Assembly (NCBI RefSeq): GCF_003704095.1
Contig: NW_020845874.1
Coordinates: 124,001-188,000, forward strand
Direction of reading: 5' to 3'
Origin: Pocillopora damicornis
Taxonomy: Eukaryota
DNA length: 64,000 nucleotides
In this document: in pieces, positions 48,470 through 56,494 of the stretch
Layout of the letters: each line of letters begins with the position of its first letter
Numbering within the stretch: the stretch's first letter is position 1
Program-made: the position numbers and the translations under genes
Notes under the pieces: generated by a model
Seen by the model: only the letters and a program-made list of their open reading frames with translations
Database searches by the model: none
What the model was told of the DNA's origin: nothing

Positions 48470-51400
48470 ATGGGCAACTTTTCAACTTCTTGTCAAAAAT
48501 CAGCGACTGATGGGGATGATATTCCACAATGGCTCAGTTTGCTGATTGTGTTATCCGTAAGTTCATCGGTTTTCCTCGGGTTAGCGATAAACTGTAATCC
48601 ATATCTGACCAGTGAAACTGGTTACGCCGACGGAGGGGATATGTATTCACACCAGATAGAAATCCTTTACCTGAAGGAAATACTACAAAGTGGAGCGACG
48701 GATTTTTGGTTCGACGAAGTCACATTAGGTTACCCGTTGTTCCTCGCGTATAGCCCATTTCCGTGTTTAGTTACATCCATCACGATGATCCTCACAGAAT
48801 CGTAAGTAGCTACTACTTTCCATCCTTTCCGGATCAAAACTTTAAGGTAATCGGCAACTTGGGGTGTATTTGAACCATGAATAGTGGAGGTGATTTGTTA
48901 GAGGAGAAAACAAATATCAAATGGAAAGGAACATTGCTACAGGTTGAGTTTGGGACTCCATGATAGAGCATAACCTCATCTCTTTGTGTTGGCACATAGT
49001 GAATGAATAATAACACAGTGGAATTTTTCTGTAGGTCAGAAACTTCAAAATGATTCTCTAAAGCATGAGAAGCTATCCCATTCGAGACAATGTTTTTTCT
49101 GTCTGTCTGTCAGACATTAACTATTTAGTAAAATTAAAAAAAAAACACACACGCACAATGTCACAGTCTCAGTGAAAAAGTTGTCCTATTGTGTCTCCCT
49201 GAGTAACTGCCTTCAGTTTATCTTGTGCAGAGTGAAAAACATTCCAGTTGCTTGAAAACTGGAAAAACGTGGTTTAAATTTAGTTATAATATTGAACTTT
49301 ATGATGGATTCGATCCAGTTGTATTGTCTTCCATTCGTTGAGGCAAAATTTAGCAAATGTTTTTGAGGAAGCAAGCGAGAATCTTAGATTGAGTTGAAGT
49401 TTTGCCGAACTCTCGATAAAGATTTTAATATACGATGGAATTTAAATTTTCCTAGGCGAAATAATTGTCACGTAGGTTCAGTAAAAGTTCGTAATCGCAA
49501 GAAATTCGTGGATGAACTCGAGTGAACGAAGGAAACGAGTTTACGACAGCCAAACCCGTGGAGTTCGAAACCATGATAGCCAAATGTTTAAGAGAACTGA
49601 AATATGTTAGAAGAGACTTTTCAGAAGAAAAATGGGAAGACTTGAAGATCTGACACACTTTTAACAAGATTCGAGTGCCAGATGGACTAAAATAGAATGT
49701 GTCATCTCAAAAATAGATGATATTGACCATTTGAATGTTAAAGTGACGAGGAAGAAGTTCAGCTATGAAGGGTTTGATAACCTTCATGATCACGAACGAA
49801 CATTGAGAGTATTCGGACTTTGAACTGTTGCAGAGATCTCACTTCCGAAATTTCAAAATCCTAGGTGTCCCTGAGCAGGAAGATGGTAGAGTGCACAGCC
49901 ATGCGTTAATATCTTTGTTTCTTAGTTTCGATTACACCTTGGGTAAAAGAAAAGACCAGGAAAAAAAGAGGATAAAAGGGCCTTGTTTGCCGGAATAAGC
50001 TTGGGTAAAGACTTCACCCTTATGTATTGACCTTCGCGAAAACACTCCAACGCCGGTGTGAATAAATTTTCGACGAAGGAAGAAGATTCTGATTAACCGA
50101 GGGAAAACTATTTGTCGATGGTAACGCAGTTCCTGTGAAACAGACCATATAATTTTGCTCGATAGTGTTAAATTTACTCGAACATATTTGTTTTCCCACG
50201 GAGAGAAAGCAACTCAATGGAAAACAACAATAGTTGGTTTATTCATGCTCAGAATACGTGTGCGATGGCACACGGGCGCAATTTCTAGAGTGAGAAAAAC
50301 TGTCTATATATATATATATATATATATATAACAGTGTCTGTTATCAATGCACTATTCTTGATTAAACCTTGAACGTATTATACAACCTTTTAACTTCCAA
50401 GAGTTATTTGTCGTGGCAACCCTTTGGCCCAAATTTGGCGATTTTTCGGGTTGACCAGATCATATGTAACCAAATTTATTCTACCAAAGGTAATTTTTCT
50501 TTTTTTTTTATCTCTGAATCTTCTTTGCAATACCAACAAAGAAACAAACAAACATTAAATCTTCATTACTCGCAAAAGATATTTAGTGAAATAATAAGAA
50601 AATTACTCACAAGTAGCAGGCAATTTCTAAGAAAATAGTTTGATCGCTGCTGGAGCCCAGTGGACAGATGAGTCGTGAGGTTCTCGAGCTAGTAACCCCT
50701 TATTATTTAGAGCCAGTTCTTTATTACTATAAAAAGAGTAACAAGAGAGAAAGAAACCAGACTCATCAGATATACAGCATTTCTCTGACGTAAGACAGAT
50801 ACTAGAATTTCTATTCAAGTTACTTACGGTGTTGTTCTGACATGAATAACGTTTAACTTCTATGGTAAAAGAAAATATATTTAGGCTTTCCAAATAATAA
50901 GAAATTTCTTTCCTAGAGATCCATTGCCTGACATGGAAGCATTTTTTCTCATGTTGATTCAAGAATTTTGAGGATGAGGGTTGCAGAAATTTTGCTATGA
51001 CGCATGCATTGTGTTGTATTTAGCTAAAGGCATAATGAAAGATGTTATCAAATACACTTAGCACAAGCTCTTTCTGCCATCACATAAACGCGCACATTTT
51101 AGAGTGTGGAAACGATAAATATTCTATTAGGATTACTAGAAGATTTAAGTAAAGGATTGTACTCTTTGTGAGAGGCCCAGACGTAGTTGCAAGGAACTTA
51201 AGTCGCATGACCATATTTTGTTTAGATTGTAACTTTCGAAATACTTACTGCATTTTGCCTCCTTTCAATTGACTGAATCCAAATTGTAGCATTTCACTAC
51301 CAAAGATTATTGACTAGTTACTTAAGACACCCATCCTTTGTTCTGTAAACAACACAGAAGCTGCTAGAGCAATATCACTGAAGAGACACATTCATAACGA

Positions 51401-54400: not shown

Positions 54401-56494
54401 TCCCATGCAGTGCACAATAATTCCCGCCCAGTGTATGATGAACTCTTGGAAACCGGAATAATTTTCGTTTTTCCACAGGCACTGGTAATCCTTTGACTTT
54501 AGCTCTTCTACCTCACTATAGCAGAAAGCCCGGTGAGTCCTTAAATTCAAATGAATGGCAGCCAAGGATCGATTGTAAGACTAAACAAATTTGAAAATAG
54601 TATATATGAATTTATTAATAAATTTTGGAGTGAGTAATCAGCGCGGAACATTCGTGGATTTCGACGCAAACGACAGCATACCCCTGCCCCGTCAAACAAC
54701 CACGTGCACTTTGTATCAATACCTTTAAACGAAGGGTAACGTTAGGAAACCGATTCGATGAACATAAAATTACTTCGTATTTATCTACATTCGAAATTTA
54801 AGAGGGATCTTTTCAGGTCTTCAGACCGAGAGATCTGGGTTCAAGTTCCAACCAGGTTATCAATGTTGCCTCTGAAGGTAATAACACTCTCCACGAAGGA
54901 ACGTAGGTAGGCATCAGTGAGCTGTCCAGTAAGGATAGTGGGGATCTGGCTGAAAAAAATAATAATTTCGTCTTGCAATTCTCTCATTTGTTTCGTTTTA
55001 CGGAATTGGGAAATGCTCCAGGTCGTACGTGAGGAAAAAAATTTAATCTTGAATTTGACAATTGACGTTGTTTCTAACTGTGTCCGTTCTGCTATATAGG
55101 AATTCTCACATATTCCAGAGGCTATCACGATTCATTGTCCCTCTACTATTTGGAGGTTTTTCAATTCAGTCTCGAGACAATACCTTGGTCTCCTGATTTG
55201 TTACGTCTCTACAACATTCGTTTTCTCGCCACATCCGGGATCGCGTTACCTCCGCACTTCCTGAAGGCTTGTCAGCTAAGGCACCTGGCCTTCGTAGGAG
55301 ACATCGAAGTTTTCGTCAGAACATTCCAAGAGAACTATGGATATTTTGAGTTTGTTCATGTGCCCGGCGCTGTTGTGGGTGATTTAAAAGGCATGCGCGA
55401 GGCTGTGTCAATATCCACCCAGCTTTTCACAAAGAGAGCTGTATTCGCCGTGAATCCTCTCAGCGCATTCAACAATCCATCCTTCAAAATTGTTGTTTCC
55501 AATAAAAATTCAGGCGGAAACTTACTCAGTTTTCTCGCTGCAGAGGAGTTTGAGATAAAGTGGTTTGTTACCAATAGGCAAGTAAAAGAAAAAGCTTTCT
55601 TAGAGGATGCAAAGTTTGGGCTCCACCCCGGAGGTGTTTCCTCACGAGTTATGCAAGAGGAAGTAGGAAGGAACTTTTATAAAGCTTATGTCCATGTAGT
55701 TGACCGAGCGTGGAGTGAGGTATGTTTTTTTCCGTTTAAGTATTGAGGCATACCATAAATTCCTGGATTAGATCATCCTTCAAATAAGCTTTCCCTTCCT
55801 ATAAGCACTTCTCACATCAGCCAAAATTCGAAAATAAGCCACTGCTTCCCCCGGTGATCTGGGTCACTATTGGGTTCATATCCTTTTATCCTCTGTTGTT
55901 TCATATATGACACACGCCCTACATACTGCTAGCTTCTGCAACGTTAATTGAAAGCTTCGAGCGAGTGACGAGAATAAGATGGATAGCGAAAAACACATTT
56001 TCTAAAACATGGCACTCCCTTGAAAAAGCTACCGAAGTTTCATGATCCTAAATCTAAAATAAACTCCGCGGACTTATATTTATAAGTTAGTTGCAAACAG
56101 ACTGGAATTAAACAATGGAAACTAAATCATAACGTGATTGTAGAAGATTGTGGTCCTGGGCATTAAACTAAGCATCCTCAAGTTATTTCACTCTTTGTTT
56201 TCACAGAATTTCTACAAGACAGAGCACCTTCTTCTCAAAGTGACTTATCACCCTTACTGGAAATGCGTCTTCCAATCATTAGCGGACGCAACTGACAGTA
56301 CACGTGACTGGCTCGAGGTTCCCGTGCATCACGTGACACCCAACCTGATGAGTGTAGTTTTACCTCCTGGGAAGCATCACGTGATCTGTCAATACAAGAA
56401 TCCCATTTATCAGAAAGTCGGTTTCATTTTGTTTTTAGTGATATATATTACATTAGTTCTAAAAGAGGTAAAATTTTTGTTGTTGTTTTTTTGA
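48470..56494 (+). CDS. Polytopic membrane protein, GT-C-type glycosyltransferase-like (PTPS-related membrane domain plus YfhO-like C-terminus), 6 exons, ~803 aa
   Basis: Exons 48470-48801, 52266-52501, 53441-54322, 54479-54532, 55100-55719, 56207-56494 are all GT-AG with compatible phases and total 2412 nt. TM1 is followed by DGGDMYSH and WFDEVTLGYPLFLAYSP, then about 10-12 hydrophobic segments. The C-terminal soluble domain has LYNIRFL and VTYHPYW...HVTPNLMSVVLPPGKHHVICQY, followed by a terminal TM helix. Confidence 0.8.
49560..50130 (+). pseudogene. Degenerate LINE ORF1-like remnant in intron 1 of the GT-C-like gene
   Basis: Fragments QRSHFRNFKILGVPEQED (49831-49884; resembles the SRRNNxRIxGxPE start of the ORF1 RRM) and GKLFVDGN (50102-50125; resembles ORF1 C-terminal KLxIDG); frames are broken. 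Confidence 0.5.
50305..50329 (+). repeat. (TA)n microsatellite
   Basis: Read directly. Confidence 0.95.
52619..53164. mobile_element. Foldback-type element, 546 bp, with long TIRs built from (TTCAGAC)n heptamer arrays
   Basis: Left AGCTACGAAAGCCGAGAAGGGACTTC+(TTCAGAC)n; right (GTCTGAA)n+GTCCCTTCTCGACTTTCGTAGCT is its reverse complement. Confidence 0.85.

What the first reader, a model, noticed from the sequence alone, without database searches (positions are those of the whole stretch)
48470..56494. Bacterial-type GT-C (PTPS-related/YfhO-like) membrane glycosyltransferase as an intron-containing animal gene
Seen: six in-phase GT-AG exons encode about 803 aa with many TM helices. Motifs include G-G-D-x3-H after TM1, W-x6-GYP-x-F-x2-Y-x-P, and a C-terminal Y-H-P-Y-W...N-L-M-x-V-x-L-P-P-G-K-H-x-V-x3-Y followed by a last TM. 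Known: this combination is typical of the prokaryotic 'PTPS-related membrane protein' and YfhO families. YfhO/GtlB transfer sugars from lipid-phosphate carriers onto cell-envelope polymers, and the standard animal GT-Cs (POMT, TMTC, DPY19, ALG, PIG, STT3) lack this C-terminal module. Inference: a horizontally acquired or anciently retained enzyme, now intronised and embedded among animal housekeeping genes (so not contamination). It could define an undescribed dolichol-phosphate-sugar-dependent glycosylation route, for example for mucus, skeletal matrix or symbiont-facing surfaces.
Basis: partly seen in the sequence, partly recalled or inferred. Interest (0 to 1): 0.82.

Follow-up and report, generated by a model that had tools for sequence, protein, structure and literature searches.

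The report
Cnidarian gene for bacterial-type GT-C glycosyltransferase
A coral gene with five introns encodes a membrane sugar-transferring enzyme whose nearest characterised relatives are bacterial; it is old and shared by corals, anemones and jellyfish, was not found in other animals, and no one has described what it does.

Summary
The exon peptides abut exactly in a transcript-derived Montipora protein.

An AlphaFold model of the Montipora orthologue (pLDDT 87.5) matches only GT-C glycosyltransferases in the PDB: AftD, AglB/STT3/PglB, ArnT, DPY19.

The animal proteins hit no Pfam family at the curated cut-off. Their prokaryotic relatives (28-41% identity) hit YfhO in 30 of 40 alignment rows and PTPS_related in 18 of 40.

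This is not contamination. RPS16 and AP-2 alpha-adaptin exons flank the gene.

It is also not a recent transfer into corals. Orthologues exist in Montipora, Stylophora, Nematostella, Rhopilema and Sanderia. All five intron positions are shared with Nematostella and Rhopilema, and the gene tree follows the cnidarian species tree.

An intronless Capsaspora gene is sister to the cnidarian clade (UFBoot 100), but a separate origin is not rejected (AU p = 0.083). No bilaterian relative turned up.

The most likely function is a lumenal glycosyltransferase that uses a dolichol-phosphate sugar, with Asp57 catalytic. The acceptor is unknown. I found no literature on the gene.

The parts
48470..48801 (+). 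Exon 1. Starts at the ATG, covers residues 1-110 and adds 2 nt of codon 111. Holds TM1 and the first lumenal loop. Donor GTAAGT.
   Evidence: 72% identical to Montipora P0214
48632..48652 (+). GGDMYSH motif in the first lumenal loop. Asp57 is at 48638-48640 and is the candidate catalytic acid. His61 follows.
   Evidence: the G-D-x3-H columns are invariant in A2 and at least 90% conserved in the 40-row alignment A4
48707..48757 (+). W-x6-GYP-x-F-x2-Y-x-P motif, residues 80-96.
   Evidence: G, P, Y and P are conserved in at least 90% of A4 rows
52266..52501 (+). Exon 2, residues 111-190 including both split codons. Donor GTGTGT.
   Evidence: same boundaries in Nematostella, Rhopilema and locus L007
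53441..54322 (+). Exon 3, residues 190-484. Most of the TM core, with the GGLPW (53716-53730), FDHGR (53797-53811) and RYLNG (54034-54048) motifs. Donor GTGAGT.
   Evidence: weak PTPS_related hit of 18.8 bits, below the cut-off
54479..54532 (+). Exon 4, 54 nt, residues 484-502.
   Evidence: a matching 19-residue exon exists in Nematostella and Rhopilema
55100..55719 (+). Exon 5, residues 502-708. Lumenal alpha/beta domain with the GYHD motif at 55120-55131. Donor GTATGT.
   Evidence: 81% identical to Stylophora P0228
56207..56494 (+). Exon 6, residues 709-803 plus the stop. Beta-sandwich end of the lumenal domain, with YHPYW (56246-56260) and PNLM...PPGKH...Y (56339-56395). The last TM helix is at 56402-56491.
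   Evidence: in prokaryotic relatives the equivalent stretch matches YfhO profile positions 763-835

Best explanation
This is a real, transcribed cnidarian gene. The window is probably from a pocilloporid coral. The gene encodes an 803-aa polytopic membrane protein with a GT-C fold.

**Architecture.** The protein has an N-terminal bundle of TM helices. Its first lumenal loop carries an Asp-x3-His motif (Asp57, His61). A lumenal alpha/beta plus beta-sandwich domain of about 320 residues follows, and then a last TM anchor.

**Likely mechanism, by analogy with GT-C enzymes (inferred, not shown).**
- It sits in the ER or secretory membrane.
- It takes a sugar from a dolichol-phosphate carrier (Dol-P-Man or Dol-P-Glc) on the lumenal side.
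- It transfers that sugar to a lumenal acceptor.
- Asp57 activates the acceptor or holds the metal and donor.
- The C-terminal domain binds the acceptor.
- The most probable acceptors are Ser/Thr-rich stretches of secreted or membrane proteins, or a glycan polymer. These are what YfhO-family enzymes modify.

**Evolution.** The gene belongs to a eukaryotic clade of a family that is otherwise prokaryotic, related to YfhO and PTPS_related. It was already present, with five introns, in the common ancestor of Anthozoa and Scyphozoa, and has been inherited vertically since. An intronless Capsaspora gene is its sister. So the gene either dates to early Holozoa and was lost in other animals, or entered the two lineages separately from related bacteria.
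For: **Shown**
- Gene structure and junctions.
- RNA evidence in relatives:
  - L001 has introns 1 and 2 removed and intron 3 retained; its ORF runs into GTGAGTGA.
  - P0232 is spliced across intron 3.
  - P0226 lies on a transcript-like contig next to a convergent 2264-aa ORF.
- Host context: an RPS16 exon and AP-2 alpha-adaptin exons.
- Fold: the AF2 model of orthologue P0214 has pLDDT 87.5 and pTM 0.90. Its 29 Foldseek hits with E <= 1e-3 are GT-C enzymes. AftD scores 1.5e-10; AglB, STT3, ArnT (TM 0.54), AftA, PglB, DPY19 and ALG12 also match, and Pmt4 follows just below that threshold.
- Relatives:
  - Prokaryotic proteins at 28-41% identity over about 70-95% of the length.
  - They sit in dense prokaryotic gene contexts.
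  - 30 of 40 family rows hit YfhO and 18 of 40 hit PTPS_related.
- Conserved columns shared by prokaryote and eukaryote rows include G-D-x3-H, GGLPW, F-D-x-G-R and R-Y.
- Phylogeny:
  - Eukaryote clade 99.5/100 and Cnidaria 98.8/99.
  - The same clade appears with PMSF C20 at 98 and with FastTree at 99.
- All five intron positions are shared with Nematostella and Rhopilema.

**From the literature**
- YfhO enzymes glycosylate teichoic acids (PMC5836110). In streptococci they O-glycosylate Ser/Thr-rich protein regions from Glc-P-Und (bioRxiv 10.1101/2024.05.05.592596).
- PTPS_related belongs to Pfam's GT-C clan (PMC7801869).
Against: - There is no enzymatic, localisation or expression evidence for the window's own species.
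- The animal proteins fall below both Pfam cut-offs, and no solved structure is detectable by sequence.
- GT-C folds can be non-catalytic. PIG-U appears among the weak fold hits.
- The donor could be a Dol-PP-linked glycan rather than a Dol-P-monosaccharide. The acceptor is unknown.
- Prokaryotic gene neighbourhoods give no consistent partner. A GT2 gene is adjacent in only one of six contexts.
- The fold was predicted for the Montipora orthologue, which is 51-72% identical per exon, and not for the window's joined protein.
- Grouping Capsaspora with Cnidaria could be long-branch attraction. The alternative is not rejected (AU p = 0.083), and the Capsaspora gene has no introns to compare.
Confidence: 0.72

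Rival explanations
1. Recent horizontal transfer from a bacterium into corals, for example from a member of the holobiont, followed by intron gain.
For: The nearest characterised families are bacterial. The distribution in eukaryotes is patchy.
Against: - Orthologues occur in Scleractinia, Actiniaria and Scyphozoa, and in a long-branch medusozoan clade.
- All five intron positions are shared between the window, Nematostella and Rhopilema.
- The gene tree mirrors the cnidarian species tree.
- Identity to the closest prokaryote proteins is only about 30-40%.
Confidence: 0.03
2. Bacterial contamination or an assembly artefact, not a host gene.
For: None beyond the bacterial affinities of the protein.
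Against: - The gene has five spliceosomal introns with canonical signals.
- GC is 37-41%, like the rest of the window.
- RPS16 and AP2A exons lie on the same contig.
- The same exon is found on many independent contigs (118 blocks).
- Spliced RNAs exist in relatives.
Confidence: 0.01
3. A GT-C-fold protein that has lost catalysis and now serves as a scaffold, receptor or transporter-like membrane protein, as PIG-U does in the GPI transamidase.
For: - The animal clade is very divergent and falls below the Pfam cut-offs.
- No partner genes are known.
- GPI-transamidase chains (7w72_U, 8imx_U; PIG-U from memory) appear among the weak fold matches.
Against: - The first-loop G-D-x3-H motif and several charged residues (D in FDxGR, R in RY, H in GYHD) are conserved from bacteria to cnidarians.
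- The protein has been conserved across a deep cnidarian split, with intact ORFs in every lineage seen.
Confidence: 0.12
4. Two independent ancient transfers from related bacteria, one into the cnidarian stem and one into the Capsaspora lineage, rather than a single holozoan gene lost elsewhere.
For: - The Capsaspora gene is intronless and somewhat GC-richer than its locus: 57% against 53%.
- By BLAST its best hits are prokaryotic proteins as often as cnidarian ones.
- The AU test does not reject placing Capsaspora with the prokaryotes (p = 0.083).
- No other holozoan or animal phylum showed a homologue.
Against: - The ML trees group Capsaspora with Cnidaria: 99.5/100, 98 with the site-heterogeneous model, 99.
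- The constrained tree is 20 lnL units worse.
Confidence: 0.35

Closest known systems
Bacterial YfhO family (Pfam PF09586): B. subtilis YfhO, Listeria GtlB/Lmo1079, streptococcal PgtC2 and PgfM1/M2
   Same: - Polytopic GT-C-type membrane protein with a large extracytoplasmic C-terminal domain and a final TM helix.
- The C-terminal H-P-x-W ... P-N-L-M-x-V-x-(V/L)-P-x-G-(R/K)-H block aligns with the stretch that hits YfhO profile positions 763-835 in the prokaryotic sister proteins.
- These enzymes use polyprenol-phosphate monosaccharides to glycosylate teichoic acids or Ser/Thr-rich protein regions (PMC5836110).
   Different: - The window's exon 6 and the full-length coral proteins give no YfhO hit, even at E <= 1.
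- In the prokaryotic sisters only the last 70 or so of the 835 profile positions match.
- This gene is eukaryotic and has introns.
- The lipid carrier would be dolichol rather than undecaprenol.
Pfam PTPS_related (PF10131), GT-C clan CL0111, function unknown
   Same: The TM core of the prokaryotic sisters matches profile positions of about 4-362 above the cut-off. Window exon 3 matches positions 83-283 weakly.
   Different: The window scores 18.8 bits against a cut-off of 26.4. Full-length coral proteins do not hit at all. The family has no characterised member to borrow a function from (PMC7801869).
Mycobacterial AftD, an arabinofuranosyltransferase (PDB 6W98)
   Same: Best structural match (E 1.5e-10). 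It pairs a GT-C TM module with large soluble extracytoplasmic domains.
   Different: Identity is 13% and TM-score only 0.43/0.29. AftD is far larger and carries extra carbohydrate-binding modules. The match shows fold-level similarity only.
Oligosaccharyltransferase catalytic subunits STT3, AglB and PglB, and ArnT
   Same: They share the GT-C fold (E 1e-7 to 1e-4; TM up to 0.54 for ArnT 5F15). Like them, this protein has an acidic residue in the first external loop straight after TM1; this comparison rests on established knowledge of these enzymes.
   Different: There is no WWDxG or DxD signature and no detectable sequence similarity. The C-terminal domain is different.
Known animal GT-C enzymes: POMT1/2, TMTC1-4, TMEM260, DPY19, and the ALG and PIG families
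   Same: Same superfamily fold, and the same expected logic of a dolichol-phosphate sugar donor. DPY19, ALG12 and Pmt4 are among the fold hits.
   Different: This is not an orthologue of any of them. It is found in Cnidaria (plus Capsaspora) and was not found in Bilateria. Its nearest sequence relatives are prokaryotic.

Membership tests
GT-C fold glycosyltransferase superfamily | Polytopic N-terminal TM module with the GT-C architecture | tested here: met
   The AF2 model of orthologue P0214 has pLDDT 87.5. All 29 Foldseek PDB hits with E <= 1e-3 are GT-C enzymes. This was tested on the orthologue, not on the window's joined protein.
GT-C fold glycosyltransferase superfamily | Conserved acidic residue in the first extracytoplasmic loop after TM1 | tested here: met
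   Asp57 lies in GGDMYSH. The column is invariant in A2 and at least 90% conserved in A4. It sits between TM1 (helix 22-42) and helix 60-75 of the model. A catalytic role has not been tested.
GT-C fold glycosyltransferase superfamily | Uses a polyprenol-phosphate-linked sugar donor | not testable with these tools
   Needs biochemistry.
Pfam PTPS_related (PF10131) | Score at or above the gathering cut-off of 26.4 bits | tested here: not met
   Window exon 3 scores 18.8 bits, E 6e-4. P0010, P0027 and P0214 give no hit. Nematostella scores 15.7 bits. 18 of 40 alignment rows hit at E <= 1e-3, and member 1, the coral P0214, had none.
Pfam YfhO (PF09586) | Score at or above the gathering cut-off of 28.5 bits | tested here: not met
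   Window exon 6 and the full-length coral, anemone and jellyfish proteins give no hit. 30 of 40 family rows hit, but only on the C-terminal 70 or so profile positions where this was checked.
YfhO-type three-component glycosylation system | Works with a GT2 polyprenol-phosphate sugar synthase and a flippase, often encoded nearby | tested here: inconclusive
   A GT2 gene is adjacent to P0030 only. The other five prokaryotic contexts lack one. In the window no such neighbour was seen among the ORFs scanned.
Gene of horizontal (prokaryotic) origin in a eukaryote | Eukaryotic sequences nest inside a prokaryotic clade | tested here: inconclusive
   The eukaryote clade branches inside the wider prokaryotic family. 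But it is sister to a 20-38-row prokaryotic group and not nested in a shallow clade. That group's monophyly is weakly supported (71.6/74; 88).
Gene of horizontal (prokaryotic) origin in a eukaryote | Patchy distribution among eukaryotes | tested here: met
   The named eukaryotic hits are only cnidarians and Capsaspora. Every representative hit ranked above Capsaspora (rank 19, E 1e-34) is a cnidarian-like or prokaryote-type sequence.
Bona fide host nuclear gene | Spliceosomal introns, host flanking genes and transcripts | tested here: met
   The transcripts were seen in related corals, not in the window's species.

The most novel reading that the evidence does not exclude
Cnidarians, and perhaps the first holozoans, run a lumenal glycosylation pathway that bilaterians lack. 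In it, a YfhO/PTPS-related GT-C enzyme transfers a sugar from a dolichol-phosphate carrier onto Ser/Thr-rich secreted or surface proteins, or onto a matrix glycan. This would be a fifth kind of animal GT-C protein or glycan modification, beside the POMT, TMTC, TMEM260 and DPY19 routes.
Probability: 0.3. Interest if true: 0.78.

Novelty: new variant of a known kind. Interest (0 to 1): 0.6.

Why it matters
New animal GT-C enzymes have each revealed a distinct glycosylation pathway: the TMTCs did, and TMEM260 did in 2023. This family is annotated only as 'uncharacterized protein', escapes Pfam, and appears in none of the papers my searches could reach.

It is a clean case of a prokaryote-type envelope-glycosylation enzyme kept for hundreds of millions of years in one animal phylum. 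It is testable in a tractable model, Nematostella LOC116617869.

It also offers a dated example, through shared introns, of how old a 'bacterial-looking' animal gene can be. That is a warning against reading such genes as recent transfers from the holobiont.

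Tried and rejected
**Family and structure searches that found nothing**
- Pfam and NCBIfam on each exon gave nothing at cut-off.
- Pfam on the spliced relatives P0010, P0027, P0214 and P0226 gave nothing.
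- A profile search of PDB sequences gave no relative.

**Searches with limited yield**
- The search for related loci with the 13-row alignment failed because no conserved stretch was available. With 5 rows it returned only two MAG loci, one Spirochaetales and one Myxococcota. The taxonomy of the prokaryotic relatives is therefore thin.
- Prokaryotic neighbourhoods showed no conserved partner.
- Four literature searches found nothing on eukaryotic YfhO or PTPS-related genes.

**Computations that did not finish**
- The PMSF tree of 109 rows did not finish.
- treekit's AU test did not finish.
- One script call was lost, and one failed on thread count.
- I replaced these with a 50-row PMSF tree, a 29-row IQ-TREE run with bootstraps and a manual AU test.

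**Hypotheses rejected**
- Contamination.
- Recent transfer into corals.

Exons were searched one by one by reference. Full-length work used the database orthologues P0214, P0226 and P0027.
- N runs were left untouched.
- I took no contig for human.

Full report
**1. The observation**

Five long open stretches and one short one on the + strand between 48470 and 56494 hold the coding sequence. I placed the splice sites using the sequence and the alignment to a Montipora protein.

The exons are 48470-48801, 52266-52501, 53441-54322, 54479-54532, 55100-55719 and 56207-56494. A script then checked each exon on its own, using phase arithmetic, per-exon translation and the four split codons.
- All introns are GT..AG, and each acceptor follows a pyrimidine-rich tract.
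- There is no internal stop.
- The total is 2412 nt, or 803 aa plus a stop.

Each exon was searched by reference. Analyses that need a full-length protein used the database orthologues P0214, P0226 and P0027. I did not touch the N runs (7001-7236, 8405-8420, 30247-30492, 42077-42190). I took no contig for human.

**2. Are the junctions real?**

No transcript of the window's own species was available, but relatives give strong support.
- The window's six exon peptides align end to end with contiguous residues of P0226: 25-118 | 120-196 | 199-488 | 490-506 | 508-714 | 715-810. The gaps fit the predicted split codons, and there is none at the phase-0 junction.
- P0226 is an uninterrupted 813-aa ORF on a Logan contig. 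The same contig carries a convergent uninterrupted 2264-aa ORF, so it is assembled RNA.
- P0214 is the 806-aa isoform X2 of a Montipora foliosa protein in NCBI, and it is colinear in the same way.
- A JGI contig from another coral (L001, P0010) has introns 1 and 2 removed. It reads through the donor of intron 3 (…TTAG|GTGAGTGA), which means that intron was retained. Its cluster-mate P0232 is spliced across intron 3.

**3. Host context**

The window's GC is even at 33-43%.

On the minus strand lie exons of AP-2 alpha-adaptin: Alpha_adaptin_C at 7873-8244, and Adaptin_N at 19197-19571 and 22574-22927. The last exon of ribosomal protein S16/uS9 lies at 44560-44847, about 3.6 kb upstream of the start codon. 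The gene is therefore in nuclear DNA of the animal.

The exon-3 ORF occurs in 118 blocks of the public collection, many of them Tara Pacific metagenome scaffolds. Stylophora pistillata LOC111322846 is 81% identical in exon 5 and 74% in exon 6. I infer a pocilloporid coral, perhaps Pocillopora. This is not shown.

**4. What the protein is**

*Family scans.*
- Pfam gives only a sub-threshold PTPS_related hit on exon 3: 18.8 bits against a cut-off of 26.4.
- NCBIfam gives nothing.
- Full-length coral proteins hit no Pfam family.

*Sequence relatives.*
- Word searches and a profile search of 1.84 billion representatives found 405 relatives at E <= 1e-3.
- The closest non-animal ones are uninterrupted 700-780-aa proteins.
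- They are 39-41% (P0029, P0030) or 29-32% (P0033, P0034) identical to the coral fragment P0010, and 28-30% identical to full-length P0027.
- They lie on contigs with dense, overlapping, prokaryote-type genes: a TonB receptor, a GT2, a lipid-A acyltransferase, and a sulfatase-type and a PMT_2-type membrane enzyme.
- Named examples are MAGs of Deltaproteobacteria/Myxococcota, Planctomycetota and Spirochaetales.
- Of 40 aligned family members, 30 hit Pfam YfhO and 18 hit PTPS_related. Where checked, the YfhO match covers only the last 70 or so profile positions.

The animal proteins fail both membership thresholds.

*Fold.*
- An AlphaFold model of P0214 built with this alignment is confident: pLDDT 87.5, pTM 0.90.
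- Against the PDB it matches GT-C glycosyltransferases. These include AftD (E 1.5e-10), AglB, yeast and human STT3, ArnT (TM 0.54), AftA, PglB, DPY19, ALG12 and Pmt4.
- From memory, these belong to the structural class usually called GT-C(A).

*Conserved positions.* Columns conserved from bacteria to cnidarians include the G-D-x3-H of the first lumenal loop (Asp57 and His61 in the window), GGLPW, F-D-x-G-R, R-Y, G-Y-H-D and the C-terminal H-P-x-W … P-N-L-M block.

**5. Evolution**

*Named eukaryotic members.*
- Montipora foliosa
- Stylophora pistillata
- Nematostella vectensis (LOC116617869)
- Rhopilema esculentum (LOC135684418)
- Sanderia malayensis
- The filasterean Capsaspora owczarzaki (CAOG_03847)

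All are annotated as uncharacterised.

*Unnamed eukaryotic members.* Exon-sized ORFs on eukaryote-like contigs fall into coral-like, anemone-like and scyphozoan-like groups. A further long-branch clade is sister to the scyphozoans (aLRT 99.1). I take these to be hydrozoans, which is an inference. One such contig, L007, holds a multi-exon copy with the same first two exon boundaries.

*Trees.*
- FastTree on 109 rows gives the eukaryote clade 99.
- IQ-TREE with PMSF C20 on 50 rows gives it 98.
- IQ-TREE LG+F+G4 on 29 rows by 700 columns gives the eukaryote clade 99.5/100 and Cnidaria 98.8/99.
- All three give the same order: (Capsaspora, ((Sanderia, Rhopilema), (Nematostella, (window, Montipora)))). 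This is the species tree.

*Relation to prokaryotes.* The eukaryote clade is sister to a broad prokaryotic group whose own monophyly is weak (71.6/74). It is not nested in a shallow bacterial clade, so no donor lineage can be named.

*Introns.* All five intron positions of the window are shared with Nematostella. There, exon 3 carries an extra 290 residues or so, and a P450 gene sits inside intron 3. The five positions are also shared with Rhopilema, which has one extra intron. The gene therefore already had its introns in the common ancestor of Anthozoa and Scyphozoa.

*Capsaspora.* Its gene is intronless: 2838 nt, lying between a NifU gene and a kinase gene. Forcing it to group with the prokaryotes costs 20 lnL units but is not rejected (AU p = 0.083). 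Two readings remain open:
- One ancient holozoan gene that was lost in other animals.
- Two old transfers from related bacteria.

*Other animals.* No bilaterian, sponge, ctenophore or placozoan relative appeared. Every representative hit that scored above Capsaspora was either cnidarian-like or prokaryote-type. This absence is only as good as the databases, and I could attach names to only about 30 of the hits.

**6. Mechanism**

*Shown.* The fold, the conserved first-loop Asp-His, and the overall layout: a large domain between the TM core and a last TM helix.

*Inferred from established GT-C enzymology and from YfhO-family work (PMC5836110; bioRxiv 10.1101/2024.05.05.592596).*
- The enzyme faces the lumen.
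- It takes a sugar from a dolichol-phosphate carrier.
- It transfers the sugar to a lumenal acceptor.
- Asp57 is essential.
- The C-terminal domain recognises the acceptor.

YfhO enzymes glycosylate teichoic acids and, in streptococci, Ser/Thr-rich disordered protein regions. Protein O-glycosylation or modification of a matrix glycan are therefore the best guesses. Nothing here identifies the sugar, the acceptor or the tissue. A non-catalytic role is possible but made less likely by the conserved polar residues.

**7. Comparison and novelty**

The protein works like a GT-C glycosyltransferase and is evolutionarily tied to the YfhO/PTPS_related group. It is not a threshold-passing member of either Pfam family, and it is not an orthologue of any known animal GT-C.

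Four full-text searches found no paper on it. PTPS_related itself is listed as 'function unknown' within the GT-C clan (PMC7801869).

I rate it a new variant of a known kind: a eukaryotic, intron-bearing, Cnidaria-wide clade of a family otherwise known only from prokaryotes.

**8. Verdict**
Correct: GT-C fold, bacterial-type affinities, host gene. Narrowed: the choice between 'HGT or ancient' moves to an ancient, vertically inherited cnidarian gene with a possible holozoan root. Still speculative: the proposed pathway.
- Interest is 0.6.

Noticed in passing
window 7873-22927 (- strand): Exons of an AP-2 alpha-adaptin gene: Alpha_adaptin_C at 7873-8244, and Adaptin_N at 19197-19571 and 22574-22927. 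Two N runs (7001-7236, 8405-8420) lie near its 3' end.
   Followed up: partly
window 44560-44847 (- strand): Last exon of ribosomal protein S16/uS9 (Pfam Ribosomal_S9, E 3.6e-9). It lies about 3.6 kb upstream of the GT-C gene's start codon and is transcribed divergently from it.
   Followed up: partly
window 52639-52745 and 53062-53144 (intron 2): Two arrays of a 7-bp unit in opposite orientation: GACTTCA x15.6 and GAAGTCT x11.9. They are about 320 bp apart and could form a long hairpin. They also create the repetitive 'SDFRLQT' ORFs seen on both strands.
   Followed up: no
L014 7449-9152 and 14315-17540 (Nematostella vectensis): The Nematostella orthologue has an insert of about 290 residues inside the exon that corresponds to window exon 3. 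A cytochrome P450 gene is nested in its intron 3.
   Followed up: partly
L013 3001-5838 (Capsaspora owczarzaki KE346364.1): The Capsaspora homologue CAOG_03847 is a single 2838-nt exon with 57% GC, against 53% for the locus. It lies between a NifU-domain gene and a protein kinase gene.
   Followed up: partly
L001 1619-1627: This metatranscriptome contig from a related coral is spliced at introns 1 and 2 but retains intron 3. Its ORF ends in the donor GTGAGTGA, so it is a partly processed or intron-retaining RNA.
   Followed up: yes
P0027 versus P0214 (Montipora foliosa isoforms): Isoform X1 (757 aa) lacks about 49 residues that correspond to the first two-thirds of window exon 2, a stretch that includes a hydrophobic segment. 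If real, this isoform would have a changed membrane topology. It may instead be an annotation artefact.
   Followed up: no
window 24107-24877 (+ strand): A 256-aa ORF with no Pfam hit. It is the longest ORF in the window outside the GT-C gene, and I did not identify it.
   Followed up: partly
window 30225-30246 and 41524-41778: Homopolymer G/C runs that translate as poly-Gly. One sits directly beside the masked run at 30247; the other lies about 300-550 bp upstream of the masked run at 42077. They look like low-complexity sequence. I left them alone.
   Followed up: no
L004 4028-6487 (Spirochaetales MAG): Directly downstream of the prokaryotic homologue lies a second GT-C-type gene (PMT_2/PMT) fused to a PA14 domain. 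The locus therefore encodes two different GT-C enzymes side by side.
   Followed up: no
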